From contig CDRNST010000123.1 in NCBI GenBank assembly GCA_977016875.1, forward strand, positions 806,001 to 870,000: a stretch of DNA of 64,000 bases, read 5' to 3'. Positions 5,154-57,574 of this stretch are shown here, in pieces; within the stretch, counting starts at the first letter, position 1, and each line of letters opens with the position of its first letter. The notes under the pieces were generated by a model. The model was given only the letters and a program-made list of their open reading frames with translations, did not search any database and was not told the DNA's origin. This stretch comes from Pavona decussata (Eukaryota). A program made the translations under genes and the position numbers.

Positions 5154-5226
5154 ATGAGGTTGTCCACAGATTTTCAGCTGTTAGCTACGCTTTTGATTTT
5201 GTGCACACTTTCCTGTTTGGTTGAAG
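5154..5226 (+). CDS. Gene A exon 1, signal peptide
   Basis: [24 protein letters not shown](G), hydrophobic core, phase-1 donor GTAAG; same 73-nt length in B. Confidence 0.85.
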
Positions 5227-7015
5227 GTAAGGCCGGTGCAGTAATTTCTTAGTAACCGAACTTTGTTTCGTTTAAAATGTTCAGATACTTTGAGATAGCT
5301 CAAAATCGAAGGAAGATAGATAAGAGCAAATCACACACCACATAACAATTTGAAAATAATTTAGCTGCAATGAGTTAAAATTTGTAAATAATGATAATAA
5401 CACCGCAGCTCGTCAGTTGCGTGTGGAGATATTTTACCAAAACACAGTAAATTTTGACTGATTTGGTTGAGGTTTCTTCCCTCTTTGGAAGGACAAGTGC
5501 GCAAACCTATTACGGACACTGTCAGCAGATAGCGTACAATTTGTTTTTGGTGGAATTTCTTGCTATTATTTAATTTTAATTCGAATACACCTTAAACTAA
5601 TGTATTTTATATGTCGTAACACTTTCCTCCCCTCCCATAGGCGCCCAAAATTAAAATTCAAGAAAAATTGACTACACTACAGCTGAATAGTTTGTATTCC
5701 AATGGCCTCTCACCCAGAAATTTCCACAAACCGGGAAAGTTAGCAGCGCAATACATACAGGGTTTCAACCTGGAATCAAAATTGTTCGCAGGATAAAGCA
5801 AAATCATAAGTTACTTGGAAACTTAAACGTTGCCTTTGAGTTGTTCCTTTTTGACTGTTTCTTATACAATTTTCCCTCAGGGCAAAATCTCTTCCAGCAA
5901 GGAAAGGTCAACTTCTCCGTGTCATATTCTGACTTGGTCCATTGCAAAACCGTGCAATACCCTCAGGTATTTTCCAGCTCGGGCAATATTCGTGTTCTTG
6001 CATCCATCAGCCATGAAAATGAGCCTCCCAGTGTTCATGATTCAGCAGTAGCGTGGACCGCCGAAGTGACGCAGAATAATTTCCGCGTCTGTGTGTTGGA
6101 ATCAGGCCTTGGTACAAATGGATCTGTTGTTGTGAATTGGGTTGCGTTTCGCGGCACGCCTTCTGGAGCACTTGACGGCACCGCCTCCTTCAATGCATTC
6201 ACCAGCGGAACACAGTGTGAAAGGGTTGACTTTGCACAGGTATGTAGCTGCTTTTTTATAAGTTTTATAAGCTCGTATTTTATAAGTTTAGACAATTGAA
6301 GTTACTTAGTATTCGTTAAACACAAAGGAAGTAGCACATTGAATTTAGGAGGTTCTCCTTGAATTTGGTGTTACTTATAACCAAAACATCATTCCCTCTG
6401 CATGCGTTTGCCTGTGCCATCCAGTTTACGTGTTAGCGCGGTATATTTTGTCACTCAAAGATGAAAAGTGGGTTGCTTCACTTTGTAATTAAAGCGTCTA
6501 ACCTACCTATCCTAAGCCAGACCCATAAAAACCAAGGGTCACTTATTAAAAAAAAAGTTTAGACGGTGTTTAACAACACCATGTTTTAAGCCATTTTCAA
6601 TGTTGCCAACATTCATATCCAAGCTTGCTTCCCAGACTAGAAAACTATTTATCCACTTAAAATAAACCACTTATAAACAGATTTGGAGGGCCACTGATTG
6701 CCTTAAGCCGCGGCCAAAGTTAGACTCTGCTTAAATAACTGGCCCCAAGTGATTAGTAGTATTACTACTCCCCTCTGGAGAGAACTTCAATCCACCGCAG
6801 GGTATCTCCGAACGGAGAAGGCAGGTATTAATGACGGGAGGTTTGGCTTTGAGATTAATTTTTGCCGAGCAACTGCTGACTCTTTTGGGTTTGAAATTTT
6901 CTTTCGGAACCTTTCTGGGAAGTAGTGATTTTGGCAGTTTGACTCTTTAAAGGCTTTTATGTGGAGAACAATCGACTTTTTTGGATTACACACACCAGTT
7001 TAACCAAATAGATCA

Positions 7016-7071
<56 letters not shown>

Positions 7072-10000
7072 ATATTATTTCATCGAGTGATTTGTCCTCA
7101 TTCATACCTCCTCGTCATTAATATACCCGAGTATGTGGAGAACAATCGTTTTTTTTTTTTTAATTACCTTCTGGCACACACCAGTTTGACCAAATAGATT
7201 ATTGTTATTGTTAAATATTATTTCATCGAGTGATTTGTCCTCATTCGCACCTCCTCGTCATTAATAGACCCGAGTGCCCCCGCCCCCACCCCCCACTCCC
7301 TGGGGATAAACTCAAGAACTTTGTTAAATTTCGCTAACGGCTCTCATCTAAATTTAAACCTGGCTGGTCTGAGAGAAAGTGGAGTACGTACCATGAGTTT
7401 GTGGTGTAAATCATCAGCACAAGACGTCTTAAACACTGAGACAACGCGTCTTCACAAAATAATGCCCTCGTATTTTCTTAAAAGCTATAATTTTCCCTTG
7501 ATGTAATATTTGATGACTTCTGCCCCTTCTCCTCAGACAAGCAATACTTGACCTGTTCTTTATTCTTGCCGGGAGTTATACATCATTTGCATACCGAAAA
7601 GTGAGGATTATCGTAATTGTTTTAGGTATTAGTTGGCTTGAAAAACAGTTTTTACTTAAGCTTATTATTGAGCTAAAAGTCGTTTTCATCTTAAATGATC
7701 TGTTCTTTTCATGAGGGTTTGCACGTCTCTTTATGAAGGTTAGCAGGGGGGAGGGGGAATTGGGGATTGACCGGAAATTAGGGGGGGGGGGAGGGGGTGA
7801 AAAAGACGAGAGGAGAAAAACAACTGAACGATTTTGAAAGAAGTCTTTGGAAAAGCTAATCAAGTGCTTCTTATTCGTTAGATAATTTCTACTTTATTAT
7901 CGATGAAAAGGATGTAAATACAGTTTCATTTCCTGGAGCGCCATTTCTGTTCATAGCAATGGCAGTTAGAATATGAGGGTCGGGAAGTAAAGGATGGGAA
8001 TCGGGAAGAGTTGTGATTTCAATTCTTACTTAGCTTTTTGCAGCCCCTGAAAAAGGTTAGTATTATCTAACCGAAATATTGGGAAATAAAATTATTTCGG
8101 CTGTCCGATCAGCCTTGCATTTAATTTTACGTTTTATTCAACATTGCAGACCCTGATCTACACAAAGATCCGGCTACACTTTGCTACTGTTTGTACAAGT
8201 GGTTCCTGCACTATTCAAGAAATACCTTATGTGATTTCTTGTCCGACCTTAAAAGTATTAAACACTTTTCGTGACAAGATATCCTTTTTTATTGCCTAAG
8301 AAGGTCAAAGGTTTAAATAAAGCAGTCCATACTCTCTGTAACCCCTTACCAAATGTAAACAATTCTATTTTTTGCTTCACAGCGATTTCCTTCTGTCCCC
8401 AAAGTACTTGCCACCGTACGTCACGCTGGCAGCACCAGACCACAGGACGCCATGAATTTGTGGATAGAAGAATTACGAGAAGATCATTTCCGAATCTGTA
8501 TCCGAGAAGTGAAAACATTTGACGGTAAACATCAGAATCTGCAAGTGGTAAGTTTTTTATTTATGCTAACGCGCACGTGACGCCTACCTCAAACCGCACG
8601 TGACCTCTTTATACACACTTGTATATTGCCAGATTTTCGCATATTTTAATTCGGTGTTTGAGCTAAATTTATCATATCCTTCAGGAGAAAACGGTAGAGA
8701 TTTTGTTCAAATACCCTCGAGTTTACACCCGTTTCTGATCAGTCACGAAACAGTCGTATGACAGATACAAAACATTGGACAGCCAAAACAACACTGAAGC
8801 CAAGGCTAAAACAGTGGAAGTTGAGGATCTGTGATGGACATCTGGATCGGCATAAAATCTTCAATGAATTTAAAGATTTACTGCAAACTGCGGCGAAGGA
8901 AAGATAAACGCAAGAAGAATACAATCCAAATTGCTTTTTTAACAAGTGGATTGATTCACAGAACTGAAAAGAATCTGAAAAGAATTGCTGTTGCTGGAGG
9001 TGCTGATTAGTACTGTGGCCGAAGTTCAAAATTTAGTGTCGATCCACTGCTGACGATGATTGAGGTGTCATGAAGTTGACACGAAAGACCATTTCACCAT
9101 TAGTCTGTTTGGTTAACATAAAAAAAAGAATTCTCCCTTGCTTTCCTTAGTATTTTCATCATCTTCTTTTTTTTTTTTTTTTTTTTTTAACGTAGGCAAC
9201 TTCAAACTAAACTACAAGGTCAAAAGGGAAGCATTAGATAGATTTTTTCCGTGTTTGTGATCTTTAGCAAGAGATTATCAGTACCTTGTAACTAAGTGAA
9301 CATTTTTTATTTTCTCTTTCAGGACTGGCTGGCTTTTTCACAGGGATTTGCTCAGTTGACTTTCCACGGAAAACTGCAGTTTGAAAATGGTGGGGCTCCC
9401 CTGGAACAGGACAACTTCGCCTTCTGTAAGGTAATGATCATTTGTTCTTGTTTTGTATTTGTTTTTACGAACTTTTGAAGGCGATAAAAAAAGCAAATCA
9501 GAGCAGGAAATGAATAAAGAAATAGTTTCTCCCCAACCAACTACCCAGCATAGAGATTCGAGTTAGCTCTCGGGCGCTGTTGTTATTTGGAGATATCAAA
9601 AGAGCGAGCTGATAACAGGATGGGGCGCTTATTTTCTGTTATGATCTCACACGTGGGAATGCCTGGACTGTAAACTGTAAAAATACCATGAACGTTCCAA
9701 AAAACTAAAGTATGACCTGTACAAGTAAAGCAAATCTCAGTTTAATCAGCTTCGCTCTTGAATTTTTCTTTGTGATAGGTACTTAATTTTACTGAGAAGT
9801 TTTATGCACCTCCTGTTGTCATGGTGACAGTCAATCACCTATACGATAGCAAGAACGTGTATTCTGTTAAGCCGGAAAACAACGTCCTTAACACCTGGAT
9901 CGAGGTAAGTTATAATCATTCCTAACAAGAAGATTTTCGGTCTACTTAGTACAAAAATAAAACCCTTGAGACAGTCACATGAATTTACAACCTTTAAATT

Positions 10001-13000
10001 ACATGTCAAACCCGGCGGTGTTTTATCAAGCTATTCACCTCGAGACCTTCCATTAGTTTCATGAAAAACACAAGCTATTCTCCTCGAGACCCTCCAAGTT
10101 TCAGGTAAAACAATTGTCTGCAACCTTGAAACCTTGCAGCAAGTTACTGCTTAGTGCATTGATCGCCATTTTACTTTTTTGAGTTCACTTCTGGTCTTAT
10201 CACAGGAAACAACCGTTTCTTACGTCCGCGTCTGCATAAAAGATTTGGCAGGAATGGAGAGCCAACATGATCCGGTCACAGTTGATTACGCAGTTATTGG
10301 AGGTAAATGGCAATATTGTATGACAGGTTTACTTTCTGATATTCTTTGAAGTCACCACGAGCTAAATGAGAACGCTTTCAATAAATGAAAAAAGCACATG
10401 TATGTATTACTTCATGTAAAAATGAAAATAACATATTGGAAATAACTTACTTTTAGAAATCCTGATTTTATTAATCCAGTCCTGTTACGAAACTTAACGA
10501 ACGGACAAAAATGTCGTTTGTGACATAAGGTCAGCCAGAACTTTCGGAAAGCCAACAGCAGCTCGGCTGGTAGATTTAGGGGATTTGGATCTGTTCGCTA
10601 AAATTTTGAGCCTGAGAATCTGATAAAATTAAACGGCGTTTATAATAATAATGTTGTAAAACAGAAAACAGCATCCGAAGTTTTTTTTGTTTGTTTGTTT
10701 AAAATTCCTTTACTGGGTGAGACAGTTGAGATGGATAAAATTTGAAAGTTCTTTGTATGCTGAAAATGACCCGGCTTTAGGTGAGGGGCCACAATCGCTT
10801 GGCTTCTAAGAAAACAACCACCAATCTATTCTAAAGTCTCGTTACATAACAGTGATTGAATAATTCATTTTAATATTGTTTCTTTCGTTTACTTATTCCT
10901 TATAAACCCTCTAAAGTTAGAGTACTTAATTGAGAAAAACAAAACATAAAATTCTTTGCATTTCATGTTGCAGAATTTGATCCGTGCATTAATGTCTCCT
11001 GTACGTACTTCGCCGTTTGTAAGGCATTTGGTCCCAAGGACGCACGCTGCATATGCGTGGATAATTGTCCGTCGTATGAAGAGCCTGTGTGTTCCTCTAA
11101 TGGTACCACATATGACAACGTGTGTGTGTTCCAGCGAGAAATGTGCCATCTGAGAGCAAACTTCACTATCTATCACCCGGGTGATTGTACAGGTAATGTC
11201 ACTGATTTCACTTCTTTTCCACAGCTGCAGATAAATTTTGAACAAACGTAAAGTGGACACTGACAGTTACACGAGATTCAAACAACACCGCAGTAACACC
11301 ACAACACATCATCTACAGTGTCCACGTCTGATAACAGTAGTCCCATTATAGGATTGAATTGACTTAGTGTTGTTGACTTTTTTGCAGGATTCCCTTCTCA
11401 AAAGGGCCGGCATCGCCTCCGCCACAATCCAGTTTGGGCTGAAGCAGTTTGTGAACAAGTTCCACTGGCTCCTTACGTCTTTTATCCTGACAAACCGGTT
11501 CACATACAGGTTTCTGTCAATCACGTGAACTTCTCAGATCCCGCATATGTCCACGAAGCAGTTGTTGCTTGGGTTGAAGAAATCATGGAAAACAATTTTA
11601 CAGTTTGTGTTACACAGGCTGGGAGAAACGAGAAGAGAAATGGAGAAACGTTTGCAACTGTTGACTGGCTTGCCTACCAGGGGGCCCCTGACGGGGGAGT
11701 GTCTGGTGAAATGGACATGCCGACTTGGTGGACTGGAACGAGCTGTCGTACTGTGTCACTTCCCTCGGTAAGAGGCAAATTGTTATTGTTTTTGTTTTTT
11801 TTTTTGAAACTGAGTTTTAAATTTTTGATCTGGTCCGGTGGTTAGAACACAAACCCTCGCACCAGCTTAGTCAGTGTACTGGAAGGTATATTGAACTAGA
11901 CATAACGGGGAAAAAGTGCGGTCAATTAAATAATATCTCTACCAAAAAATCAGAGAATTTCAAGATTTGAGTTTTAGTTAGGCAGAAGAAATTTTTATTT
12001 ACCGCTTTTATCTACATATAAACACTTATATTGCCGTTGAAAATTGGGCCTTTTTTGTTGTCCTTGATTACAGAGCAAGTTTAAGTCGACGCCCACAGTT
12101 CTAGTGTCAGCGGAGCATGAAAGGCGTGGTGTGAAGCACGATGCATCTTCTGTGTGGTTAGAAGATATCACGAGAACTTCTTTTAAGATCTGTGTCAGAG
12201 AATTACAGAACTTTGATGGAGTTCACCAAAGTATTTTCGTTGTAAGTGGTTTTAGTTGTTACTCGTCTTATGATTTCCTCAAGTTCAAACTTCGCGCCAA
12301 AACTCAACCGAGGCCCGTTGTATGAAAAACTGCATCCAATTTATACCTCTATGTTAGACGGTACGGAAAAAGACTGGATGAATGGAAAACAATTGTTCTT
12401 GGAGTTTTTCTTGAAGCATGCTCTTATTGTTTTCGATCGGTATATTTCATTTTATCACAAATGGAAATATGCTGCTTTCGATTTATAGAGTCTTGCACCG
12501 GGTATTCTTATAGGAAGATCACCATAGCTATTTCTTCTCTCTTAAACATTAACCTCTTGGACGGTTGACAAGTGACAACGTGATAACAAACAATGGCTTC
12601 TTTGCAGGATTGGATAGCCTTTGAAGAGCTTCATCGACCTCTGTTTAGAGAGCATGGGGCTATATACTTCTCCAATTCAAACAAGCCATCCCGACATTTC
12701 AACAATGCTTTTTGTGAGGTAGGTAGGCCAGTATTGCACTTACGTTTACAACCTCTGACGGTCTTTAAACGGTTACAACTCCTTTTATAGATGACCACCG
12801 GCACGTCTGATCGCGAACATATGCACTTATACATTCACGCTTGTAGTCGTGCCTACATTTGCGCATGCACCCTAACCCACTCACACAAACAAACTTACGT
12901 ATGTTCACACTCGCTTTTTCGTTCATTTTTTATTTGCTCTTTTACTCACTTTCTATCAGATGCACTCCTGAAACTTTTAATTTAATCAACCCTTCATCTC

Positions 13001-16000
13001 TCCTTTCCTTTTTTTGTCTCTCCCTTGTTATCTTTCTTCCCTGTTCTTTCATTTTTTCTTCCCTTCCTTTTGTTGTTTTATTCTCTAGTTCATAATTGCT
13101 TGGTTGATTTTTTTAATTGTTTATTTTATTCTTTGTTTGAAAATATTCTAAACTTACAAAAGGTTTGTTTTACCATCATGCACAAACAGTGAAATTTTTT
13201 CACCTTTAGGATGTCGTGTTTAAGAAGCATTACAATGACTCTCCCGAAGTGTTGGTGTCAGCAAACCATTCAACAAGTGGAGGAAACCTTAACCCTTTGT
13301 ACAACTCTATTTCAGCTTGGGCTGAGGTAAGACAACAACAGCATTTGTAAGTTAATCTTAGCTTCATTAGTGTTTTGCAATGCACCGTAAGAGATGTGGG
13401 CATATAGTGTAGAGTGATCGTTAAGAGCTCGTTAGGCGAGATTCTTGGTTTGAGAATTGGTCCTAGCTTGCTTTCTCCTTTTGAACGGGTGAGGGTATTA
13501 TAGAGGCGAGAACTGAGGCCTTGCGATAAACTGGCTTCTTATATAGGGAAGTATAGTTACCCTTTAGGCACTTTATGCCAACAAAACGGGAGCTCATCTA
13601 CAACTTGATGGGCAACTTCAGGAACAGACCTACTCTTAAGTTGTCTTTATGGTTGCATGCTACTAATTTCTAACACATTTTATTTTTTTTTTATCTTTGC
13701 AGTACATAAACAAGACGGGCTTTAGAGCTTGCGTGAAGGAACTATTTGTGCAACAACACGACCCTCTGTCAGTGTCTTACGCAGTTTTCCCAGGTAGGCC
13801 CTGAGCCATAGCTAATTATAAATAGCGCTGCAATTCTTGGTCTAACTACAAATCGATTCGCCAGAGAATGTTATTAGATATATCAGATTTGATCTGCTTC
13901 TGTATAAAAAATTTCCCCAAGTCTAATTTTTCTTCTCATGCAAAAGTTGTCTCTTGAAAACAGGAAATTTTATTTTAGCCGGGACAAATATTATTCTCAT
14001 ACGGAAAAGGTACTGCTTAGGAGGAAAGCCAAATTATGGGTTGTTTCATAACCTTAAAAAAATGTTAGCTTTTGTTTTCTCTCTTTCGTCAAATAACTTT
14101 TTTGTAGCATTGGTCTCTCCTTTAACATTACGGTAACAACAACAGCTTCGTAGTTTAATTTATTACTTTATTTTTCAAAGATGTCTGTGAACCCGGCTGG
14201 AGTTTCTACAATGGCTCCTGTTACTTCACCAGCGAAACATGCGAGACTTGGTCCAATGCAAGTATAGCCTGCAGAGCCATGGGTGCAAATCTTGCTGGTA
14301 TTGAAAGCCAGGAAGAAAACGTATATATCCAGCATAGGCACAACGGTGACAAGGCGTGGATCGGTTACAATGACATTGCCACAGAAGGATTATTCAGCTG
14401 GGTGGATGGATGTCCTGATAAATTTCGCTACTGGGCTCAAAACCAGCCAAACGACTTTAGAGGGGAGGACTGCGTCCACACCCTGGGGGCAGGGCATGGG
14501 TACATGTGGAATGACGTGGATTGCTCTGCCTGTCATCAGTACACATGCAAGAAAGGTAGTCACAAATTAGTTTCTGTCCTACTAGATACATTATCTTCCA
14601 CTATACTGAGAGCAATGTATATTCTCAAAAGAGATTCTAAAAGAAACAGAGAGATACTATTATTGAATCAGGGGAGATGGGTAGGGAAGGGGGAGGGGAG
14701 GGGTAAAAAGGAGGGGGAGAAAGGAGACGGACTTTCTTATAAGCTGATTAGACTGACTCTTTTGTTTTTTCTTTTATGTCATAGTAACAATTAATTTCCT
14801 TTGAAAGCCACTTTCAAACATCTTTCTGCTCAGATTATGACGAATGCAGCAGCAATCCATGTTTGAATGGCGGCACCTGTGTGAACGGAAAAAGGAAATT
14901 TACTTGCGTCTGCCCTCGGACACACAAAGGAAGTACATGTGAAGGTAAGCATACAACTCAGTTTTCTGATTTCTCTCTCACCCTTTTACGCCTGGGTTAT
15001 TTTTCTGAGTTTCTGTGTCAAGACTGCCCCACCATCACCACCGGATCACTAATAACTTCAAGAGTATTGAAAGTATGACTTCAAATCCTGGAGGATACCA
15101 AGTGCTTCCATTTATTTCTTTTGAGGTCCGTAAACTGGGATACTGACTGCATATGACGTGGATATTACGTCGTTTTACCGCACATCCGCAACCTTGGTTC
15201 TCGGTTCAGAAAACCATCCGAAATAACTCAAAGTAATGGAAACCGATAAACAAACGTTAAAATTGGTCAAAAATGTAAATGTTGCGAGGATAAACTTAAA
15301 TTTTTTATTAAAAAGTAAGAAATCCAAAGTTTGAGTCATGGAAATATCAAGTCATTATAAACATATTTTTGCCATCTGAGGAAAAGTTTGGTGCTGGTTT
15401 CCTTAATATTAAGGACCGATTATGAACGTTCAAATCAAGCGCAGGTACTTTGTGCATCGCAGACATTTAATTGTGCCGTCAAAAGGAAATCCAACCATAA
15501 AATTCTTTATGATCTAGCCTTATGGAAGCGGATAAAGTTTGGCCGTGCTATATATTTCTGTTATGGGGATGAAAACCATTAATTCTAATTATAAGTTGAA
15601 GTTTTAGCGTATCTTTTGCCTTTCAGAGTTTGACGAATGCTCCAGCAATCCCTGTATGAATGGAGGTACTTGTACTGATGGAAACAATAACTACAGATGC
15701 GCATGCCCATCATCATTCTATGGAAAACAGTGCCAAGGTAAGAAACCAATTTCGCAGTTGCTGATACATAGTTTAAGTTGGTTCATGATCGTACAGAGTT
15801 ACCAAAACTTTTTATCGTGTAGTTTATGGTGATAGTTTTTGGCAAATAAATATTATGTGTTGAGACTTTTTTTCCCAAAAAAGTCGCGCTTAAACGTTTA
15901 GGAAAGGTAAGTTTTCGTGGCAGGAACTCAGTATCCTCTTCAATGAAGGCTAAATTAAGAATAAAATCAAGGTACGTATTTACGTGGAGCTCGACTAAAC

Positions 16001-19000
16001 GATCTCCGGACCAGTTTAGCCACTTAGATCTATGACCTGCAATGTGTGTCATTTTTACCTGCCTTAGTTTGCCCCATTAAAACTCAAAACAGAGTTTTAG
16101 GTGACCATTTTGTACAAATGCAAGTAACATTTATTGAAGTTGATTTTATCACAATCTCAACAGAAACAAACGAGTGTCAGTCCAACCCTTGTCAAAACGG
16201 TGGAACATGCGTAGATGGTGTGAACAAATTTACCTGTCTGTGTAGAAGTGCTTACGGAGGAACATTTTGCCAAGGTAAGACCAAATACAATTAGTTGTTT
16301 TCCCTGAAGTTTATTCCTTTGTCATTAGTGTATACTCAAAACTCATCCAAATATGAAATTAGTCTTTGACCAATCTTTGCTTAGGTCTAGGTTCCAGACG
16401 CCACTCGGGTATCATCTCAGTCAGTTTGAAATTACCCAATTAAAGTGTACCCGCCCCCAATTCGCTTAAACAGTGCAACTTAAAATTAATAGCTCCTGGA
16501 AAAAATGGATTTGGATGAATCTGAGGTTTTCTGTGGCTCGACGAAATTTCGAAACTACCCCCTAGAACAGCGACATTTTGATTCGCTGGCGAGTTTAAGT
16601 TTTTGTTGAATGAGTCTGGCCTCTATTGTGACGTCTACGCAGGAACGGGGGATCTTTCGCATTGAGTAATTTATCTGAAGGAAGAGCACACGTAAAATGA
16701 GTTAAAATAAGGTTGGAAGGCCTGCATAATTTATACTTACTACGCAATGAAACATAACCAAACTTGGTAAACTTACCAATTTTTATGTCTTCTTTCTGGT
16801 GATGGGGTTTATTTTTGTCCATGTGACGCAATTTGAACAATGTGTTAACTAGGGCCCAGTCCCTTTATGAAATTTGGAGCGGGCAATTATACGTTTGCTG
16901 CGGGTTACCAAAGTGATTTGTAGGTTTTTGCTGCACTGAACCATCGCTTGTTTTGCATTTTGATCTGAAATGTCATTTCTGTCTTTCGTAGTCTGTGGCA
17001 CTCTCCTGTTTATCTGTCTCTTATTGATTCTCTTAAGCGACTGTGGTTCTTGTGCTATTTAAGTTGTTTCAAGTAGGTTTAGCTGGGGTCGTTTCAGTCC
17101 ATGATAATACGACTTCACTTCCGTTGAGATTCATCTAACGATACAATCCGAAACATTCTTTGGGCCGTATAATAAGCTTTATTGTTATATGATGTAATTG
17201 CCAGTTGTGCTGTAGGCAGGTTTGCTACTCCTTTGACCTTGGTCAAGACTTTCTTGAAGGTTAATGTTAAGAAGCTAAAAGGAAACCATTTTGTCATTCT
17301 CATTGTTTACCCTTTCCAGACACTCTACTAACATGTTACTACTCTCCATTAGTGTGTTTTTGCATACCACCGTTGCTTATCGTTTTGTGGGAAACGTCTG
17401 GTCTTGGTTGACATAAAGTCACAAACATGCTTAGAGTACAGTGGGCTGCAAGCCCTGTAGTTTTAGTGCATGTTCTCGAGAAGAGCAAGCTGACAGAGTC
17501 ATAAAGCAGATTGACTAAAGATTACCGTTACCTCTACGTTTTTTGAATTAGAACCTTGCGTGCGCAGCGTTTAGTAGAAGGAAGGCTGAAGTCTATTTAA
17601 GTCTAGCTCACGGCGCTTTTTTTGTCATGGTTTAGCTCCGCATTATAACTGTGAGGTTTGTGTTGCAGGGGCTTAACTCAATATTCTCTTTCTTCTTGTT
17701 TAGGCCAGTATATTGACTGTGTTTTGAGTTTGCAAAACGATACTTTCGATTCCTTCTTGCATCACATCAGTTGCCTTGAAAGGCTTTATTTCAGACTCGC
17801 TGTCGTAAAAAAATTCAAAGATATTCCGGCAGAAATTTACGAAGGAAGGAATTTACGAAATCATCCTAAGTTGAAATTCTAACAAGCTCGATTTTGTTTG
17901 ATCCTATAAACTGTCAAAATAATAGAATTAGCAGACTTGAGAAAGGAATGCTAAAGGCAGTCTGAGTGGGGAAAAAAAAAAAAAAAGAAAAATTATTTAG
18001 ACTAAAGTTCGGCCACTGTAAGAATGGAAACGAAACTCGCTGAACTGGTCGGCATTGAACATTCAATGGAGGAAACTGAGGTTGGAACCAAAACATTGTC
18101 TCGTAGACCTACCTAATAAAGGCAATTTTTGAACTCAGTCTAAATCGCATTTTATCAACTTCCCCTTAAGAAAAAAGGCGAAAAGAATGCGAAATCAAGG
18201 TCACTACGCATATTGGTTGGGAATTTGTGTTTGAAGCTCAAGTGCTTTGTTCGACGTCTACAAAACTCTGACAGTTCCAAAGTAACTTCCTACTCAGAAA
18301 CAATATGTGCAGTTTTATCGGCATTTTCTTTCCTTGTTTCGATCGAGAAGGAAGTCGAGGAACGCGAGCGGCGACGTCTCTCCCTCCCAATCCCTCCTCG
18401 TTTTTACCGTAAATTTGAATAAGTTATTTGAATTTTAACTCTTACGTATGATCTGAGGAAAAAGGATGACTGCTTGTAGTCTGCATTGATTATTACCGGC
18501 TAGACATGACGTACACAAATCTCGTTTGAAAATTGCTGTAATATTAACATTTGTTCACCAACAAAAAAACAAAAAAAAAGAAAAAAAACTCAACGAAACT
18601 TATGTCCTTAAAAAAAGGAGCCAATCAAGTCAGAACTCTCCGAAATAGAAAATGGCACGCTTTTGAGTCTATGTTCGCAGGAAGGCCATACTTTTTGTTC
18701 GAGGCAGGGGATGCCTTAGGTTATCATTCAGTTCTCATTAATCGGCAATAACCAATAGCATCAACAGTACCGTAACGTAGCCTAACTATTTTAGGATAAA
18801 AAAATTGTTTAAAATAAATAAATAAGTATTATCATCAGAGCCTAGGGTATTTAAAACTTTTACCATTTACATTTTTTATTTCATAGCTCCCGCAGCGGCA
18901 TCATGCAAGAGCCACTATTCAGCTGGGCGACGCTCAACTGGATTGTATTACATAAACATCGGAGGATCTTCTTTCCAAGTGAGTACGGTATTTGCATTGA

Positions 19001-22000
19001 TCTTGTAACGGTACGCATCTTCACGAAACGATCATCACTTGTTGCAGACAGTAGATTGGTCAAAGGAATTAATCTACATTTTTAATGGTTATTATAATTC
19101 TCGATAACCGCCGTCCAGAACGATCATCTTTAGGGACGGCGTCTCATTTTGTTACTACTGTTTCTTTATTACCTCTGCAAAACGTGTGGTTACCGCAAAT
19201 TTTCTGTTTGGATTCCAATACGGCCGCCCCTTGCTAAGATCTGCTTTTCCCGTGCAGTCTTGAATCCTGCAAAAATATCATTGTATAAGGAGGCACCATC
19301 CTTTACATCTGCAAACAGGTTTCAAGCTTCGTTTCTGAGGATACCATGGAGCGAAAACGCTTTTCTGCAACGATTCTTTTTCTGGACCTTGAAAAATAAC
19401 AACAACTCTGCATACTACACACGGGGTGCTTTTAATTGTCAGCTACAAGACGCTTACGCTTGTTAAATGAATGGGCCCATTTTTTTTTTTGTCTTTTTTA
19501 TTTCACTTCCAATGAAGAGTTACAGAGAAACAGTTACAAACATAAATACAAGCTAAGAAAATACAATACAATACAATACAATACAATACAATACAATACA
19601 ATACAATACAATACAATACAATACTTAGCTTTAAAAAAATGACAGAAAAAAAAAAGATGTTTGATTACAATTTACAATACCCAAGTTGCAGCTTACGTTT
19701 AATAGGCAAAAAGGTAGCTTTTTGCTCTATGGCATTTAAAGATTGATTTGTAATTTTGAATTGGGTTTTTCCATGTCAAGTTTGCTCCTCAGAACACCAA
19801 GGAAGGTATCAAAGAAATAAGGGTCTTCTTCTCTCGAGGCAATGTAAATGTAATCTTTTGCAATTATTAAACTGAGGTTCAGGCCAAGTTGCAGCGCGAT
19901 ATTGTTAGTGCGGAAGCCATAGATAATATTTTCTTCGTTGAGCTCGTTTTTTTATGTATTCCACCAATTTGCAAATTCCGTCCAAAAGCTTTTGACAAAT
20001 GAACAAGATATAAATAAGTGTGTTAGTGTTTGTTTGTGTTCGCAAAGATGGCATTTATCCTTCTCTTTAGTTTTATCTCTAAATAAGGTTGCGTTAGTTG
20101 GCAAAATATGGTGCTGAAAGATGGCGAGTTTAATATCTTTAGTGACATTAAACGGTATATTGTAGTTCGTTTGAATTGCGTTGTCAAAGTAAAAAGCTTA
20201 CTACATGCCCATGAGTGCGAAATTGTGATGCTCTCTGAGGAGGCTTTCCCATTCGAGTAAGTTAGTCTGATCCAGTTAACTATTTTTGAATGGAACTGTT
20301 AAAATTTATTTCGTATTGTTAGCCCTATTTGAAAAATGACCAGTTTCGTACAATTCGTCCACATCTTACGCGTTGTAATGGTAAAAAAAATATACATGTA
20401 TGTTCTAGTTCATAGGTAAATTGTTTTGTTGCGCTGAACTGCTACATTGTAATTTTTAAAGTTGTGAAATTTGATAGTTTAAATATAACGGCTGTTGTGT
20501 TTTGTCCAAATTTGACTCCATTCCATTCTAAATTTATGGTGAGGCGATCGGGGATCATTTGCGGTCCAATTTGGGGATCATATCCGGTCCGGAGATCATT
20601 TGCGGCCCGGGATCACTTGCGGGCCTGTACAGAGGTCGATAAAACCGGGCGGCAGATATCAAATCAGATGACTGTTACCGTCCTGATAACCACTATTTGT
20701 ACCTCTAGACGTGTTTCATCCAAATAGAGCGCGCGGAAATTCGGCATCACCTGTCTCACTCCCCCATTTCTCGCTCGCTTCAAACCTTTCGTTCGCACCA
20801 TCGCAAAAAATTGCAACTGTATTCCTGTCGACTTATGAACTGTGGTTTGCCAATTGCTTTGACATAAGTGGTCTTTTGTTTCAGCAACCATGTCTAATAC
20901 TTAGCATACCATTTTATTTCTGAAATTGATATCCCTTTTTTAACTCGTGAATGCACGCATGTGCAATGAACGAGTTATAGCGATTGTGGGGTTTTCACTT
21001 GGTTGGTGGGCAATCTCGTTCCCAGAGGCTGCTTTCTTTTTGGTCAGCACGAAGGAAACAAGACCTCTGAGCTAATCAATGTCAAAATCCAGCAAATAGA
21101 AATCTGATTGGCTAATATATTTTACCGGAAGTGCCTTTGAATTGGAGGTTTCAAAACAGGAAATAAAATAGACTATCAAAGACATCTGAAAGTGGGCAAG
21201 GCAAAAGCCGCCATAGAATCGAAATGCAACCAAATTTCCATTGACTTTTTTTTGCCAGTAAGACAACACAACAAAGATAACAAGTGTAAATCACGACTAA
21301 ACGGAAAAGGCGCAAAAACCTTTGCGATATGTTGCAGCGTTTGACAAAGCTGAATGACAATATGACACTTGCGTCGAAGCTCACGTCGAGGTTACGATAG
21401 ACTTGACATTTTTCGGAAAAAACTCCTCTAATTATCGACTCTGAAATGTGGTTCATAATCAATGCCAGCCGTTTAGAATCGTTCTTGACATTGTCTAAAG
21501 CGGATAAGAGTTTGACAGCCTTTCTCGTGCTGTTGAAGGAACTGAAAGAGCAGAAAGAAGCAAACTTGTAATCCATTCGCACCGCGGAGTTATTTGCGAG
21601 TTTATCTGACTGGAGCAGAATTTACTCAAGATTACTTCTTTGAACTGGAACAGATATTCTGTCTGCAGCTTGGCAGAAACATAATTGAAGGTTGAACAAG
21701 AAACACAAACAGCCTAAGTATGTGACTGCTGGGTTAAGATTATCCAAGAATGCGTTGCCCAAAAAGTGGTTCAGAAAGCGGTCGGACAGAAAGACAACGC
21801 CTGGAATAGCGATCGTTGTCACTCTTTACACCAAGTTCATTTGTGAGCTTTCTAAGTTTGCAGCTTATAGGACTGATAAACCACATCGAGTGCAGGTAAA
21901 ATATTTTTTTCAGGGTGAATTTCTTAAGCTTACACAGAGTGTGTGAATTGAAAAAAAAAATAGCCGATCTTTCTGATTAGCTTAGATTTTCAAGTTGCTG

Positions 22001-23804
22001 ATTATTTGGATTGAACTTTTACAGAGTTGTGTCTTCTTATTAAATGGTATGGGCGGCCATCACCGCCAAAAATACAAGCAGTGCAAACGATATAGAGTAA
22101 ACAGAAATGGTTTAATTGTCCTTTTTAAATTGGTTTAGACAATTTAGAGACGATGCAGTTAGAATGCATTTGGACAGGTTGTCTTTGATGGAATGATATA
22201 GCCAAACAATAAATGGTTTAGACAATTGCAAAACTGTCCAGCTATCAATGCCATAACGGTACACGAAAGACAGAAATGATCTAGTATGAATGTGAATAAT
22301 TCAGCTTCCGTTAGTAAAACAGCACAGGCAAAATAGAATTGGACAAAGTAAATGAAAAGTGGTGAAGTAGTCAATGTTAAATTGGCAAAGTCAATTCTCA
22401 AACGGTTTAGCGTAATTTGAAATGATTTAGTACAATGCCAAACAGTATAGCTTTCTGTGAAATGGTTTGTGACTTACCATCACAGTAAGCTTTGCTTTTT
22501 TTTTGATTCGTTTTATTATTTCAATATGCAAATTTCGTTTTCAAAAATTTCCGGATACGGCCGGAAAATACGCTGGATACGTGTGGACGCAAGCCGTATT
22601 CGTAAAAAAAAATTTGCGTTTTCACAAATTTCCGGATACGTGTGGACGACGCCTTAATGTAAAGAAGCACATGTCTTCTCAACTAGCGGATGAAATTCGC
22701 CCAGACAGAAGCCGCAGTAAATTTCATTCGGGGTCCAGTGTGAGCGATTCATTCATTTTCATAAGATCGATTCAACAGGAAAATGTAAACTTGCTAATGT
22801 ATAGCGACAATATTCAGCCAAAATAGCAACCTAATCAAAAAATGAAAGCTTCTTCTGATATGAAACGTGACAAAAGCCGTCGTTTGAACGTGGAAAGAAA
22901 TATTACCATGCCGAGAACAGGAAGATTTAGGTCACGTGCTGGGCAACCAAAGTCGTTGACATCAGTATCAAGTTTAATTCAGCAACAACACGACGCGAGG
23001 AAAAAAAATTACAGAACACTTTTTTGTCGATTGGCAACCATGCTATAATCGCCTATAATTATGTTCCTTTATTGGTCACTATGCATTTTTCCAGCTTTTA
23101 CGTGATCCCGTTATCTAAATGTAATTCGAAAAATTAGTTCCACGCAAAATACTAAAAGATTTATCTTTTTGTGTTTTAAGGTGTACTGCTATGGTGGCTG
23201 GACTTTAATCTCACGCTTCTCTAATGCTGACAGTGCGAACTGGATGCAGTACAACGCCAGCTGGTGGTACGACCGAACGACATCTTACGGCAGGGTAACC
23301 AGTCCTTCAAGCAACTATGACATGATATCACCCGCATTCTGGCTCGTCCGAGGCTATTACATCAGAATAACGCGCAATGACGACAGCTCCCATACATATC
23401 TTCTACAGACTGCTTATAGCTGCATTGGTGGGGTGACCTTCAGAAGCTTTATTACCAGCTTCGGAAACTTCAGGAATGGTAACGTCTGGAACAGCAACGG
23501 TTGTCGCAGAACCTGTTATTCGTACTTTGGGGGACGTTATTCATATACGGTGGGTTTCAGCCAAGCGTACTGCAGCAGCAATCTTCAAAGCCGTTCTTAC
23601 CTGTCATTCTGGTGTGACTGGAGTACTGGTGACGGATCTGTGATGATGATTGGCGGAGGAGGTGATTATTGCAAGAGGGCAGATCATGGGATTGGTATCA
23701 CAGAGGCTGATCAGGCTAAGTTCGGTACAAGTAACTGTGATGGAGACTTTGGTGATAATTGCAACACTCCTTCTAGCTACTCTCTTAATTTGTGGATTAA
23801 ATAG
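5154..23804 (+). CDS. Gene A (complete, 18 exons): secreted mosaic lectin-like protein, ~1145 aa; SP - 3x H-lectin-like - FS/Kazal - 3x H-lectin-like - CTLD - 3x cbEGF - fibrinogen/intelectin-like domain
   Basis: join(5154-5226,5881-6239,8383-8547,9323-9430,9779-9904,10206-10302,10974-11192,11388-11767,12074-12241,12608-12718,13210-13326,13703-13793,14181-14555,14834-14944,15627-15737,16164-16274,18887-18978,23181-23804). All introns GT-AG, phases compatible, total 3438 nt, no internal stop seen. Exons 1-17 are matched by paralog B. Confidence 0.9.
5881..6239 (+). CDS. Gene A exon 2, H-lectin-like module 1 and start of 2
   Basis: ccctcag|GGCAAAAT...GCACAG|gtatg; QNLFQQGKV...NFRVCV...VNWVAF...CERVDFAQ. 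Confidence 0.92.
6959..7275. repeat. Local tandem duplication (~175-bp spacing) with a (TTA)n expansion (7017-7070) in copy 1
   Basis: ATGTGGAGAACAATCG...CACACACCAGTTT.ACCAAATAGAT...TTTCATCGAGTGATTTGTCCTCATTC...ACCCGAGT occurs twice. Confidence 0.85.
8383..8547 (+). CDS. Gene A exon 3, H-lectin-like module 2
   Basis: cacag|[12 protein letters not shown]...[20 protein letters not shown]|gtaag, 165 nt. Confidence 0.92.
9323..9430 (+). CDS. Gene A exon 4
   Basis: ttcag|DWLAFSQG...DNFAFCK|gtaat, 108 nt. Confidence 0.9.
9779..9904 (+). CDS. Gene A exon 5, H-lectin-like module 3
   Basis: gatag|[20 protein letters not shown]...NTWIE|gtaag, 126 nt. Confidence 0.9.
10206..10302 (+). CDS. Gene A exon 6
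   Basis: cacag|[13 protein letters not shown]...DYAVIG|gtaaa, 97 nt. Confidence 0.9.
10974..11192 (+). CDS. Gene A exon 7, follistatin-N + Kazal domain
   Basis: [14 protein letters not shown]...[26 protein letters not shown]...C...HPGDC; 10-Cys follistatin pattern, phase 1-1. Confidence 0.93.
11388..11767 (+). CDS. Gene A exon 8, H-lectin-like module 4 and start of 5
   Basis: tgcag|FPSQKGR...[15 protein letters not shown]...VDWLAY...SLPS|gtaag, 380 nt. Confidence 0.92.
12074..12241 (+). CDS. Gene A exon 9, H-lectin-like module 5
   Basis: tacag|[13 protein letters not shown]...[20 protein letters not shown]|gtaag, 168 nt. Confidence 0.92.
12608..12718 (+). CDS. Gene A exon 10
   Basis: tgcag|DWIAFEELH...NNAFCE|gtagg, 111 nt. 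Confidence 0.9.
13210..13326 (+). CDS. Gene A exon 11, H-lectin-like module 6
   Basis: tttag|[20 protein letters not shown]...SAWAE|gtaag, 117 nt. Confidence 0.9.
13703..13793 (+). CDS. Gene A exon 12
   Basis: tgcag|[15 protein letters not shown]...SYAVFP|gtagg, 91 nt. Confidence 0.9.
14181..14555 (+). CDS. Gene A exon 13, C-type lectin domain
   Basis: [13 protein letters not shown]...AWIG...WVDG...WAQNQPND...EDCV...WNDVDC...YTCKK. Confidence 0.95.
14834..14944 (+). CDS. Gene A exon 14, Ca-binding EGF 1
   Basis: [37 protein letters not shown], 111 nt, phase 1-1. Confidence 0.93.
15627..15737 (+). CDS. Gene A exon 15, Ca-binding EGF 2
   Basis: [37 protein letters not shown], 111 nt. Confidence 0.93.
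16164..16274 (+). CDS. Gene A exon 16, Ca-binding EGF 3
   Basis: [37 protein letters not shown], 111 nt. Confidence 0.93.
18887..18978 (+). CDS. Gene A exon 17, start of fibrinogen-related-like domain
   Basis: catag|(A)[30 protein letters not shown]|gtgagt; homolog at 53424-53521. Confidence 0.85.
19560..20175 (-). mobile_element. 3' fragment of L1/Tx1-like LINE (zf-RVT region) with (AATAC)n tract at 19560-19624
   Basis: Minus strand reads [28 protein letters not shown]...[25 protein letters not shown]. Confidence 0.7.
20190..20629. mobile_element. One arm of the TIR family seen at 28738-30597
   Basis: GGGATCATTTGCGG repeats ending GGGCCTGTA; internal homology to 30214-30597 and to the reverse complement of 28738-29205. 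Confidence 0.75.
23181..23804 (+). CDS. Gene A exon 18 (terminal), fibrinogen/intelectin-like domain
   Basis: ttaag|[14 protein letters not shown]...YSLNLWIK*; phase-0 join with exon 17 gives the FQVYC..GGWT motif; AATAAA near 23972 and 24007. Confidence 0.88.
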   Translation: MYCYGGWTLISRFSNADSANWMQYNASWWYDRTTSYGRVTSPSSNYDMISPAFWLVRGYYIRITRNDDSSHTYLLQTAYSCIGGVTFRSFITSFGNFRNGNVWNSNGCRRTCYSYFGGRYSYTVGFSQAYCSSNLQSRSYLSFWCDWSTGDGSVMMIGGGGDYCKRADHGIGITEADQAKFGTSNCDGDFGDNCNTPSSYSLNLWIK

Positions 23805-24440: not shown

Positions 24441-24559
24441 TGTAAAGTATATGAAATAATTCATATATGAACTGCGGATAAAGATGAAAGTGAGAAGTGA
24501 TCATCGCAGTGAATTTTCCAATTTATGCAATTGGAAATTGGAAGCCTGAAAAAAATTCA

Positions 24560-24592
<33 letters not shown>

Positions 24593-41550: not shown

Positions 41551-41582
<32 letters not shown>

Positions 41583-57500: not shown

Positions 57501-57574
57501 GGATGTTACGAGTATACGCGGCAAAAATATCCACGTATATCATGTCATAATTTTGAAACGAATGGCCAACCATA
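54507..57574 (+). mobile_element. IS3EU-like DDE DNA transposon with ~640-bp inverted arms and 6-bp TSD
   Basis: CTACCA|TATGGTTGGCCATTCG...CGAATGGCCAACCATA|CTACCA; arms 54507-55150 / 56932-57574; integrase-like ORF inside. Family name rests on recalled IS3EU features (TAY..RTA ends, 6-bp TSD). Confidence 0.8.
54816..56377 (+). pseudogene. Disrupted DDE transposase/integrase-core gene
   Basis: HTH-like QLEYL...FNWPQITRMLLVSRTTL*RR; core [41 protein letters not shown]; tail SNNYGVDLY. Stops near 55083 and 55300; frameshifts near 55170, 55895 and 56285. Confidence 0.85.

What the first reader, a model, noticed from the sequence alone, without database searches (positions are those of the whole stretch)
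5154..23804. Secreted mosaic protein joining up to three unrelated lectin-type folds, present as a tandem gene pair
Seen: manual splicing of 18 GT-AG exons gives an open 1145-aa frame with a signal peptide and no TM segment. It holds six beta-rich repeats (C..V.F...F...P.V...H...D....W.E......F.VC....V.W.A), FS/Kazal, CTLD, three cbEGF and a FQVYC..GGWT-initiated C-terminal domain. Known: H-type lectins (Helix pomatia agglutinin, discoidin, octocoral SLL-2, which acts on Symbiodinium), CTLDs and fibrinogen-related/intelectin domains each recognise glycans. Inference: one chain may read several glycan classes and cross-link microbes, symbionts or mucus. I do not recognise this architecture as a named gene.
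Basis: partly seen in the sequence, partly recalled or inferred. Interest (0 to 1): 0.75.

Follow-up and report, generated by a model that had tools for sequence, protein, structure and literature searches.

The report
LePin-like coral lectin gene array
This is a real 18-exon coral gene for a secreted protein that joins three lectin folds, but it belongs to the LePin family already shown to help soft corals capture their algae, and it is one of about twenty copies in a tandem array.

Summary
Eighteen GT-AG exons (5154-23804, + strand) give an open 1145-aa frame. It has a signal peptide and no membrane segment. The order is six beta modules, an FS/Kazal module after the third, a C-type lectin domain, three EGF modules and a C-terminal globular domain.

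All three lectin folds are supported. Module 1 models as an H-type lectin sandwich (Z 8.0-9.9 to snail agglutinins, SLL-2 and discoidins). The C-type lectin domain passes Pfam. The C-terminal domain of a 75%-identical homologue models as an intelectin (X-type lectin) fold, Z 13.8-14.5 against at most 7.2 for ficolins.

The architecture is not unnamed. It is that of LePin, a secreted Xenia lectin that binds symbiotic algae. Homologues of 1150-1192 aa with the same domain order occur in Acropora, Stylophora, Oculina, Actinia and Nematostella.

The "tandem pair" is part of an array of about 20 gene units on this contig. The second copy is intact, but its last exon lies about 11 kb beyond the window.

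Published LePin descriptions do not list the intelectin-like end. A model also supports each three-module block folding as a single-chain pseudo-trimer.

The scan had already reached the same reading on two paralogous stretches of this array. No RNA test was possible.

The parts
5154..23804 (+). Gene 1, a complete LePin-like gene: 18 exons, 1145 aa
   Evidence: Splice and frame reconstruction. Oculina patagonica proteins P0208 and P0067, and the transcript-like P0345, map colinearly onto the same exon borders.
5154..5226 (+). Exon 1: start codon and signal peptide (about 24 aa)
   Evidence: It holds the only hydrophobic stretch of the protein. The donor is AAG|GTAAGG.
5881..10302 (+). H-type lectin cassette A, modules R1-R3. 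Exons 2-6: 5881-6239, 8383-8547, 9323-9430, 9779-9904, 10206-10302
   Evidence: The R1 model has pLDDT 82.8 and six strands. Foldseek and VIA-align top hits are HPA, HAA, SLL-2 and discoidins, Z 8.0-9.9. R1+R2+R3 of the orthologue P0067 are predicted to pack together, score 0.88 against a best control of 0.20.
10974..11192 (+). Exon 7: follistatin-type/Kazal module
   Evidence: Pfam Kazal_2 4.5e-10 and Kazal_1 2.2e-06.
11388..13793 (+). H-type lectin cassette B, modules R4-R6. Exons 8-12: 11388-11767, 12074-12241, 12608-12718, 13210-13326, 13703-13793
   Evidence: Exon sizes and phases mirror cassette A. R4~R1, R5~R2 and R6~R3 are the best pairs. Pfam H_lectin scores 16.8-17.1 bits on exon 9, below the cut-off of 24. 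The equivalent region passes Pfam in full-length homologues.
14181..14555 (+). Exon 13: C-type lectin domain with QPN (aa 760-762) and WND (aa 781-783) motifs
   Evidence: Pfam Lectin_C 2.5e-17, 64 bits. Motif positions.
14834..16274 (+). Exons 14-16 (14834-14944, 15627-15737, 16164-16274): three EGF modules, one per exon, all phase 1
   Evidence: Pfam EGF 37.2, 34.6 and 35.7 bits. EGF_CA is sub-threshold. The D/E-x-D/N-E-C starts are visible in the sequence.
18887..23804 (+). Exons 17-18 (18887-18978, 23181-23804): C-terminal intelectin-like (X-type lectin) domain and stop codon
   Evidence: The window's own exons give no Pfam or NCBIfam hit. The 75%-identical joined homologue P0245 passes Fibrinogen_C over its N-terminal part, 37.7 bits. 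Its model matches intelectins at Foldseek 4.9e-9 to 4.5e-8 and Z 13.8-14.5 over 217-229 residues; ficolins and other fibrinogen-related domains (FReDs) reach Z 7.2 at most.
31650..53521 (+). Gene 2, the paralogue: exons 1-17, open, 91.4% aa identity to gene 1. Its last exon lies outside the window at C123:881155-881793
   Evidence: dN/dS is 0.07-0.26 for the domain blocks (0.61 for the 25-codon signal peptide).
39558..40886 (+). Retroelement integrase ORF inside intron 7 of gene 2 (not part of the gene product)
   Evidence: Pfam DUF5641 4.6e-24, rve and Integrase_H2C2. This intron is 2784 nt, against 195 nt in gene 1.
44689..45333 (+). Reverse-transcriptase fragment inside intron 11 of gene 2 (not part of the gene product)
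   Evidence: Pfam RVT_1 8.1e-08. This intron is 2778 nt, against 376 nt in gene 1.

Best explanation
Gene 1 (5154-23804) is an intact member of the LePin-like family of secreted anthozoan lectins, sitting in a large tandem array. The protein is exported through its signal peptide. Its two blocks of three H-type lectin modules each probably fold into a single-chain pseudo-trimer that mimics the obligate trimer of free H-type lectins, whose sugar sites lie between subunits. An FS/Kazal module separates the blocks. A Ca-type C-lectin domain (QPN/WND), a three-EGF spacer and a C-terminal intelectin-like head follow. The chain would thus carry several glycan-binding surfaces of three kinds and act as a soluble bridging or opsonising lectin, coating algae or microbes and presenting them to host cells, as shown for Xenia LePin. 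Shown here: the gene structure, the domains, the folds, family membership by architecture, and the array. Inferred: the pseudo-trimer (model only), sugar binding by each domain, and the biological target.
For: Gene model: 18 GT-AG exons and 1145 aa open. It is colinear with annotated Oculina proteins. It is also colinear with P0345, a 1153-aa protein carried on a 4380-bp contig, which cannot hold the introns and so must be a spliced transcript. Domains: Kazal and Lectin_C, EGF x3. H-lectin fold. Pfam H_lectin reaches 35-75 bits in full-length homologues, and the ESM Atlas nearest cluster carries H_lectin. Intelectin fold. Pseudo-trimer: ipSAE 0.88 against a best control of 0.20. That mark was reached by 51 of 78 solved complexes and 2 of 108 mismatched pairs. 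The runs agree in at least 84% of contacts and the partner's pLDDT is at least 74. LePin link: the published architecture and function. The three published Xenia LePin peptides find their best matches at aa 621 (R6), aa 221 (R3) and aa 790 (the CTLD/EGF1 junction, 10 of 15 identical); 0, 2 and 0 of 1000 shuffles reach those scores. Same-architecture proteins of 1150-1192 aa occur in Acropora palmata, Actinia tenebrosa and Nematostella, with shorter ones in Stylophora and Oculina. Both window copies are under purifying selection, dN/dS 0.07-0.26 for the domain blocks.
Against: Pfam H_lectin is below its cut-off on the window's own exons, and the joined protein was not scanned. The Xenia LePin sequence was not on hand, so homology to it rests on architecture and three 15-aa peptides. 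The intelectin model has only moderate confidence (pLDDT 69.2) and comes from a 75%-identical homologue, not from the window. Profile searches against PDB sequences find no intelectin or H-lectin. The complex prediction cut one chain into three, and it may score high from memory of solved H-lectin trimers. The family also occurs in Nematostella, which the LePin preprint describes as non-endosymbiotic, and exon-level homologues occur in the cold-water coral Desmophyllum pertusum. A symbiosis-specific role therefore cannot be assumed for this copy.
Confidence: 0.8

Rival explanations
1. Same protein, different job. The array encodes general innate-immune agglutinins or mucus lectins aimed at bacteria and other microbes, not at choosing Symbiodiniaceae. 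The large, diverging array would then be a recognition repertoire, like other expanded invertebrate lectin families.
For: The full architecture is present in Nematostella (P0351, 1192 aa), which the LePin preprint treats as non-endosymbiotic. Exon-level homologues are present in Desmophyllum pertusum. Vertebrate intelectins bind microbial glycans (cited in PMC6321704). The genome holds at least 34 close exon-2 copies and 50 last-exon copies. The last exon is the most diverged part between the two window copies: 75.8% aa identity against 91.4% for exons 1-17.
Against: The only functional data for the family (Xenia LePin RNAi and antibody staining) point to alga binding and uptake. dN/dS in the C-terminal domain is 0.24, so there is no sign of positive selection in this pair.
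Confidence: 0.35
2. The exons belong to two or more separate genes (for example an H-lectin/Kazal gene and a CTLD-EGF-FReD gene), or this particular copy is an unexpressed duplicate in a decaying array.
For: No RNA evidence from this genome could be obtained. Introns 16 and 17 are long, 2.6 and 4.2 kb. Nematostella also has 712-aa H-lectin+Kazal-only proteins (P0070). Some array copies carry stops or are partial.
Against: All 17 junctions keep the frame with canonical sites. The transcript-like P0345 and the NCBI protein models of four other genera (listed as uncharacterized LOC proteins) join the same parts in the same order and at the same size. P0245 joins the exon 17 and exon 18 equivalents. 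dN/dS of 0.07-0.26 between the two copies argues that both are maintained.
Confidence: 0.07
3. Its main role is as a matrix or protease-regulating protein. The FS/Kazal module and the EGF repeats would be the working parts (follistatin- or agrin-like inhibitor or growth-factor binder), and the lectin-fold domains would serve only as scaffolds.
For: The Kazal module is among the best-conserved exons: 86-88% identity to Oculina and Acropora. The family's name itself stresses the protease-inhibitor domain.
Against: There is one Kazal module against eight lectin-fold domains. The C-lectin keeps its Ca/sugar-site motifs QPN and WND. No inhibitor activity has been reported for LePin in the papers read.
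Confidence: 0.05

Closest known systems
LePin (Xenia sp., Xe_002591) and 'LePin-like' proteins of anthozoans (Hu et al., Nature 2020, PMC7332420; bioRxiv 10.1101/2022.12.13.520278; Palythoa preprint 10.64898/2026.04.08.717340)
   Same: Signal peptide, no membrane segment, several H-type lectin modules, one Kazal, one C-type lectin, EGF modules. The three published LePin peptides match homologous positions of gene 1.
   Different: The published domain lists name no C-terminal fibrinogen/intelectin-like domain. Whether Xenia LePin has one could not be checked. Here the gene is one of about 20 units in a tandem array; I found no such array described in those papers. Function is untested in any stony coral.
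H-type lectins: Helix pomatia agglutinin (2ce6/2ccv), Helix aspersa agglutinin (4q56), octocoral SLL-2 (3wmp), discoidin I/II C-terminal domain (2w94, 2vm9)
   Same: Six-stranded beta-sandwich. Z 8.2-9.1, 85-89 residues aligned, rmsd 3.0-3.5. A trimer-like packing is predicted.
   Different: Those are separate subunits that assemble into trimers. Here three modules are fused in one chain, twice. Sequence identity is only 10-18%, and Pfam H_lectin is sub-threshold on single exons of the window. Sugar-site residues were not compared.
Intelectins / X-type lectins: human intelectin-1 (4wmq, 6usc), Xenopus XEEL (5zc0, 4wmo), lamprey LSVL (7e1e)
   Same: Whole-domain fold match: Z 13.8-14.5, 217-229 of 250 residues aligned. 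Only the N-terminal part resembles Fibrinogen_C in sequence, as also reported for placozoan intelectin-like proteins (PMC6321704). A GGGG run is conserved.
   Different: Identity is 15-17%, with no sequence-level hit to any solved intelectin. The domain here is the C-terminal module of a 1145-aa mosaic, not a free protein of about 300 aa. The Ca/diol-binding residues were not compared.
Classical fibrinogen-related lectins (ficolins, tachylectin 5A, FIBCD1)
   Same: The start of the domain follows the FReD pattern (C...G..SG.Y.I....F.VYC....GGWT). Pfam Fibrinogen_C positions 3-97 are matched in homologues.
   Different: The fold match is much weaker: Z at most 7.2 and TM 0.25-0.41. The C-terminal two-thirds do not match the Fibrinogen_C profile.

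Membership tests
LePin-like lectins (criteria of Hu et al., bioRxiv 10.1101/2022.12.13.520278) | N-terminal signal peptide and no transmembrane segment (secreted) | tested here: met
   The only hydrophobic 19-mer windows (KD 1.6 or more) lie at residues 5-25. SignalP and TMHMM were not available.
LePin-like lectins (criteria of Hu et al., bioRxiv 10.1101/2022.12.13.520278) | H_lectin, KAZAL, CLECT and EGF domains all present in one protein | tested here: met
   Kazal_2, Lectin_C and EGF pass Pfam on the window's exons. H_lectin is shown by fold and by Pfam in colinear homologues.
LePin-like lectins (criteria of Hu et al., bioRxiv 10.1101/2022.12.13.520278) | BLASTP similarity covering at least 60% of Xenia LePin | tested here: inconclusive
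   The Xenia sequence was not retrievable. Only its three published 15-aa peptides could be compared. They match at aa 621, 221 and 790, with 0, 2 and 0 of 1000 shuffles reaching the score.
LePin-like lectins (criteria of Hu et al., bioRxiv 10.1101/2022.12.13.520278) | Expression in alga-hosting cells; binding to algae | not testable with these tools
No expression data for this genome.
H-type lectin domain (Pfam PF09458) | Score above the Pfam gathering cut-off (24 bits) | tested here: inconclusive
   The window's single exons score 13.8-17.1 bits or nothing, and the own-genome six-frame scan reaches at most 21.4 bits. Modules are split over exons, and the joined protein was not scanned. Colinear full-length homologues score 35-75 bits.
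H-type lectin domain (Pfam PF09458) | Six-stranded antiparallel beta-sandwich like HPA, SLL-2 and discoidin | tested here: met
   The model has six strands and pLDDT 82.8. Fifteen chains at Z 8.0-9.9 are all H-lectin-fold chains: the lectins themselves and the phage/pyocin fibre domains of the same fold. A gap follows to unrelated capsid jelly rolls at Z 6.2.
H-type lectin domain (Pfam PF09458) | Trimeric assembly | tested here: met
   This is at the level of a model only. R1, R2 and R3 of orthologue P0067 were folded as three chains: score 0.88 against a best control of 0.20, with R3 touching both R1 and R2. The score may reflect memory of solved trimers.
H-type lectin domain (Pfam PF09458) | GalNAc/Gal-binding residues at the subunit interface | not tested
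   No residue-level structural alignment was available.
C-type lectin domain (Pfam PF00059) | Profile match, and the Ca-site-2 motifs (EPN/QPD-type tripeptide plus WND) | tested here: met
   Lectin_C 64 bits. QPN at aa 760 and WND at aa 781. QPN is a mixed motif, so the sugar preference cannot be read from it.
Intelectin / X-type lectin | Intelectin fold over the whole domain, distinct from classical FReDs | tested here: met
   Tested on homologue P0245 (75% identical, exons 17+18 joined). Z is 13.8-14.5 for five intelectin entries against at most 7.2 for ficolins. Foldseek gives 4.9e-9 to 4.5e-8 against 3e-4 or worse. Model pLDDT is only 69.2.
Intelectin / X-type lectin | Detectable sequence homology to known intelectins | tested here: not met
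   phmmer and profile hmmsearch against all PDB sequences find no intelectin. Pfam sees only the N-terminal Fibrinogen_C part.
Intelectin / X-type lectin | Ca-coordinating and diol-binding residues of intelectin-1 | not tested
   No residue-level alignment was available. The family has its own invariant block around the GGGG run.

The most novel reading that the evidence does not exclude
The uncharted C-terminal end of LePin-type proteins is an X-type (intelectin-like) lectin head, and this head, rather than the H- or C-type domains, sets which alga or microbe is bound. In this coral the array would keep a repertoire of different heads (last exons 71-84% identical among close copies), while the 5' H-lectin exons are kept nearly uniform (87-99%) by gene conversion. 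That would give strain-level discrimination of partners by a family of tri-lectin opsonins built on two single-chain H-lectin pseudo-trimers.
Probability: 0.2. Interest if true: 0.65.

Novelty: new member of a known kind. Interest (0 to 1): 0.35.

Why it matters
LePin is one of the few coral genes with functional evidence for a role in taking up symbiotic algae. The authors of that work proposed comparing LePin-like lectins across corals to find what sets partner choice. Three points here would shape such work. First, in this stony coral 'LePin' is not one gene but an array of about twenty. This may be why one study could not confidently identify LePin in Oculina (PMC12278269). Second, the protein ends in a large intelectin-like domain that the published domain maps omit. 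Third, the H-lectin modules are probably built as two fused trimers. None of this changes the basic picture: the family and its architecture are already known.

Tried and rejected
- Joined protein: the spliced protein was never sent to a search tool. All searches were exon by exon, by reference. The joined translation was built only inside local scripts, for the frame check, hydropathy, peptide matching and dN/dS.
- Pfam and NCBIfam on the window's own exon 2, exon 8 and last exon: no hit.
- phmmer of exon 2 and the last exon, and profile searches with alignments A1 and A2, against all PDB sequences: only chance-level hits such as synaptotagmin and coagulase/fibrinolysin. These were rejected as noise.
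- H_lectin family scan of the own genome in six frames: only sub-threshold exon hits.
- Xenia LePin itself: not among the 353 proteins fetched. A fuzzy peptide search of the first 222 proteins found none.
- 'Pseudogene' reading for gene 2: considered and rejected. All 18 exons are open and dN/dS is well below 1 in every block.
- 'Classical ficolin-like FReD' for the C-terminus: considered and rejected in favour of intelectin-like, on the Z-score gap.

Full report
**1. The observation**

The window is AT-rich eukaryotic DNA (37-45% GC). On the + strand between 5.1 and 23.8 kb there is a chain of open segments. I scored every in-frame GT/AG pair between neighbouring segments and chose the chain that keeps the frame.

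The result is 18 exons: 5154-5226, 5881-6239, 8383-8547, 9323-9430, 9779-9904, 10206-10302, 10974-11192, 11388-11767, 12074-12241, 12608-12718, 13210-13326, 13703-13793, 14181-14555, 14834-14944, 15627-15737, 16164-16274, 18887-18978 and 23181-23804. All have AG acceptors and GT donors. The CDS is 3438 nt and the frame is open for 1145 aa.

The only hydrophobic stretch is the N-terminal signal peptide.

All database work was done exon by exon, by reference. The joined translation was used only in local scripts.

**2. Independent support for the splicing**

Two annotated Oculina patagonica proteins (P0067 and P0208; names) map onto the window exon by exon. The borders are the same and identity is 70-91%.

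P0345 is a 1153-aa protein carried on a contig of only 4380 bp. That contig cannot hold the introns, so it must be a spliced transcript. It is colinear with exons 2-18 at 72-94% identity for most exons; the HSP over exon 11 extends beyond it and reads 57%.

P0245 is a 250-aa protein from assembled sequencing runs. It joins the equivalents of exons 17 and 18 across the FQ|VYC junction.

**3. The domains**

Pfam on the window's exons gives:
- Kazal_2 at 4.5e-10 and Lectin_C at 2.5e-17.
- EGF at 34.6-37.2 bits for each of the three EGF exons. EGF_CA is below threshold, so 'calcium-binding' rests only on the D/E-x-D/N-E-C starts.
- The C-lectin keeps a QPN tripeptide and the WND motif.

*The six beta modules.* The window's single exons reach only 13.8-17.1 bits for H_lectin (cut-off 24) or nothing. 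An own-genome six-frame scan with PF09458 stays below the cut-off. This is because four of the six modules are split over two or three exons. Colinear full-length homologues score 35-75 bits.

The fold test is clear. Exon 2 (module R1) was modelled with a 106-sequence alignment, giving pLDDT 82.8 and six strands. Foldseek ranks Helix pomatia and H. aspersa agglutinins, SLL-2 and discoidin II near the top, together with phage and pyocin fibre domains of the same fold. VIA-align gives Z 8.0-9.9 for fifteen such chains, with 77-90 residues aligned. Unrelated capsid jelly rolls follow at Z 6.2. The ESM Atlas also puts exon 2 next to a cnidarian cluster that carries H_lectin.

*The C-terminal domain.* The window's own exons give no Pfam, NCBIfam or PDB-sequence hit. 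Homologues with exons 17 and 18 joined pass Fibrinogen_C, but only over roughly profile positions 3-97 of 221. The model of P0245 has pLDDT 69.2. It matches lamprey LSVL, human intelectin-1 and Xenopus XEEL at Foldseek 4.9e-9 to 4.5e-8 with TM 0.59-0.62. VIA-align gives Z 13.8-14.5 over 217-229 residues. Ficolins, tachylectin 5A, angiopoietins and fibrinogen reach Z 7.2 at most. The domain is therefore intelectin-like (X-type lectin) rather than a classical fibrinogen-related domain. Placozoan intelectin-like proteins show the same pattern of a short, N-terminal-only FReD signal (PMC6321704).

So three lectin-type folds in one chain are supported.

**4. What it is**

LePin is a marker of the alga-hosting cell type of the soft coral Xenia. 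It has a signal peptide, H- and C-type lectin domains and a Kazal domain, and it has homologues in Exaiptasia and in stony and soft corals (PMC7332420).

The follow-up preprint reports that LePin is secreted, lacks a membrane segment and is found on algae. [quoted passage not shown] The preprint defines LePin-like proteins by the presence of KAZAL, EGF, CLECT and H_lectin domains (10.1101/2022.12.13.520278). A 2026 preprint uses the same definition in Palythoa.

Gene 1 has all of these features. The three Xenia LePin peptides printed in the preprint find their best matches in gene 1 at aa 621 (R6, 7 of 15 identical), aa 221 (R3, 6 of 15) and aa 790 (the C-lectin/EGF1 junction, 10 of 15). Only 0, 2 and 0 of 1000 shuffled peptides reach those scores. 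The full Xenia sequence was not on hand, so the authors' 60%-coverage criterion remains untested.

An architecture search with the C-terminal domain of P0208 found the same full design at nearly the same length in Acropora palmata (1155 aa), Actinia tenebrosa (1150 aa) and Nematostella vectensis (1192 aa). Shorter versions occur in Stylophora pistillata (1062 aa) and Oculina patagonica (1028 aa). The architecture is therefore old within Hexacorallia. It is already in public annotation, mostly as 'uncharacterized protein'.

**5. The array**

Exon 2 has 29 copies at 82% identity or more on this contig, between 0.17 and 1.22 Mb, and 5 on contig C88. More than 100 further copies at 29-42% identity are spread over other contigs.

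The last exon has 50 copies. Sixteen intact ones at 71% identity or more lie on this contig. Pairing the two lists gives about 20 gene units.

Gene 2 of the window (31650-53521) has 17 intact exons and is 91.4% identical to gene 1. Its introns 3, 7 and 11 are 2-2.6 kb longer. Intron 7 holds a retroelement integrase ORF and intron 11 a reverse-transcriptase fragment. Its last exon lies outside the window at C123:881155-881793. It uses the same AAG|GTG acceptor and has an open 212-codon frame.

Between the two copies dN/dS is 0.07-0.26 in every domain block and 0.61 in the 25-codon signal peptide. Synonymous divergence rises from 0.17 in the first H-lectin block to 0.66 in the last exon. This fits either gene conversion of the 5' part or recombination between older lineages.

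**6. How it probably works**

Free H-type lectins are trimers whose sugar sites lie between subunits. This is established for HPA, SLL-2 and the discoidins, the entries matched.

Here the six modules form two cassettes of five exons each, with matching sizes and phases. R1/R4, R2/R5 and R3/R6 are the best pairs, so a three-module unit was duplicated.

I tested this by folding R1, R2 and R3 of orthologue P0067 as three chains:
- The score is 0.88 (three runs: 0.88-0.89) against a best control of 0.20.
- That mark was reached by 51 of 78 solved complexes and 2 of 108 mismatched pairs.
- The runs agree in at least 84% of contacts, and the partner's pLDDT is at least 74.
- R3 touches both R1 and R2.

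The model supports the packing but does not show it. It may also draw on memory of solved H-lectin trimers.

My reading is a secreted chain with two pseudo-trimeric H-lectin heads, a Ca-type C-lectin, an EGF spacer and an intelectin-like head. It would act as a multivalent bridging lectin, as shown for Xenia LePin. Sugar binding by each domain, and the target (symbiont or microbe), are inferred, not shown.

The family also occurs in Nematostella, which the LePin preprint treats as non-endosymbiotic, and in Desmophyllum. A general immune or mucus role is therefore a serious rival.

**7. Novelty**

The family and its core architecture are known.

Three points appear to go beyond the papers read:
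- The C-terminal domain has an intelectin fold. Pfam already flags its start as Fibrinogen_C in public homologues, but the LePin papers do not list it.
- Its place in an array of about 20 genes.
- Model-level support for fused H-lectin trimers.

Two earlier follow-ups of this scan reached the same LePin-like reading on paralogous stretches of the same array (s1-480583 and s1-480625). My tests were run independently of them.

**Verdict:** a new member of a known kind, of modest interest.

Noticed in passing
G000 contig C123:170000-1220000 and C88:50000-210000 (window = C123:806001-870000): Close copies of exon 2 are 87-99% identical to gene 1, while close copies of the last exon are only 71-84% identical. 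Between gene 1 and gene 2, synonymous divergence rises along the gene from 0.17 to 0.66. This suggests gene conversion of the 5' exons or mosaic recombination within the array.
   Followed up: partly
C123:319886-320506 and C123:308154-308462 (outside the window): A last exon 100% identical to gene 1's lies 509 kb upstream. An exon-8-type hit sits at the same 11.7-kb spacing as in gene 1, but no exon-2-type hit was listed at the expected place. This is either a recent partial segmental duplication or an assembly duplicate.
   Followed up: no
C123:884289, 243092, 364073, 435949/436492, 639917 (outside the window): Five times in the array, an extra exon-2-like exon lies about 3.1-3.4 kb after a last exon of the 75-77% class and about 4.7-6.6 kb before the next gene's exon 2. 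This points to a higher-order repeat unit that contains a solitary or duplicated exon.
   Followed up: no
proteins P0351 and P0070 (Nematostella vectensis): Nematostella has a 1192-aa protein with H_lectin, Kazal, Lectin_C, four EGF_CA modules and the same C-terminal domain (53% identity, E 3.5e-76). [quoted passage not shown] That describes P0070 (712 aa) but not P0351.
   Followed up: partly
proteins P0069 (Porites evermanni), P0352 (Porites lutea), P0353 (Acropora digitifera): There is domain shuffling around the family. P0069 has the H_lectin-Kazal-CTLD-EGF body but ends in a uromodulin-type D8C domain. The intelectin-like end domain also occurs behind F5/8-C + sushi (P0352) and behind EGF + laminin-G-like (P0353).
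   Followed up: no
window 54507-57574, 58855-59763, 60195-62605: The last intron of gene 2 (from 53522 to beyond the window end) is filled with mobile-element remains. These are an rva_4/rve integrase-core ORF (55303-56007), an ORF with a baculovirus-FP-like domain (58855-59763), and a LINE with endonuclease (60195-61175) and reverse transcriptase (61133-62605).
   Followed up: partly
window 24494-24655: A short open frame whose translation looks like a read-through of a tRNA-like sequence. It is probably a tRNA-derived SINE between the two genes (judged by eye only).
   Followed up: no
protein P0208 (Oculina patagonica KAL9984803.1): This public 1464-aa model fuses an O-methyltransferase domain (residues 57-168) to the N-terminus of a LePin-like protein, and it carries five EGF matches with the C-lectin placed among them. 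It is probably a gene-model fusion or mis-join in that annotation.
   Followed up: no
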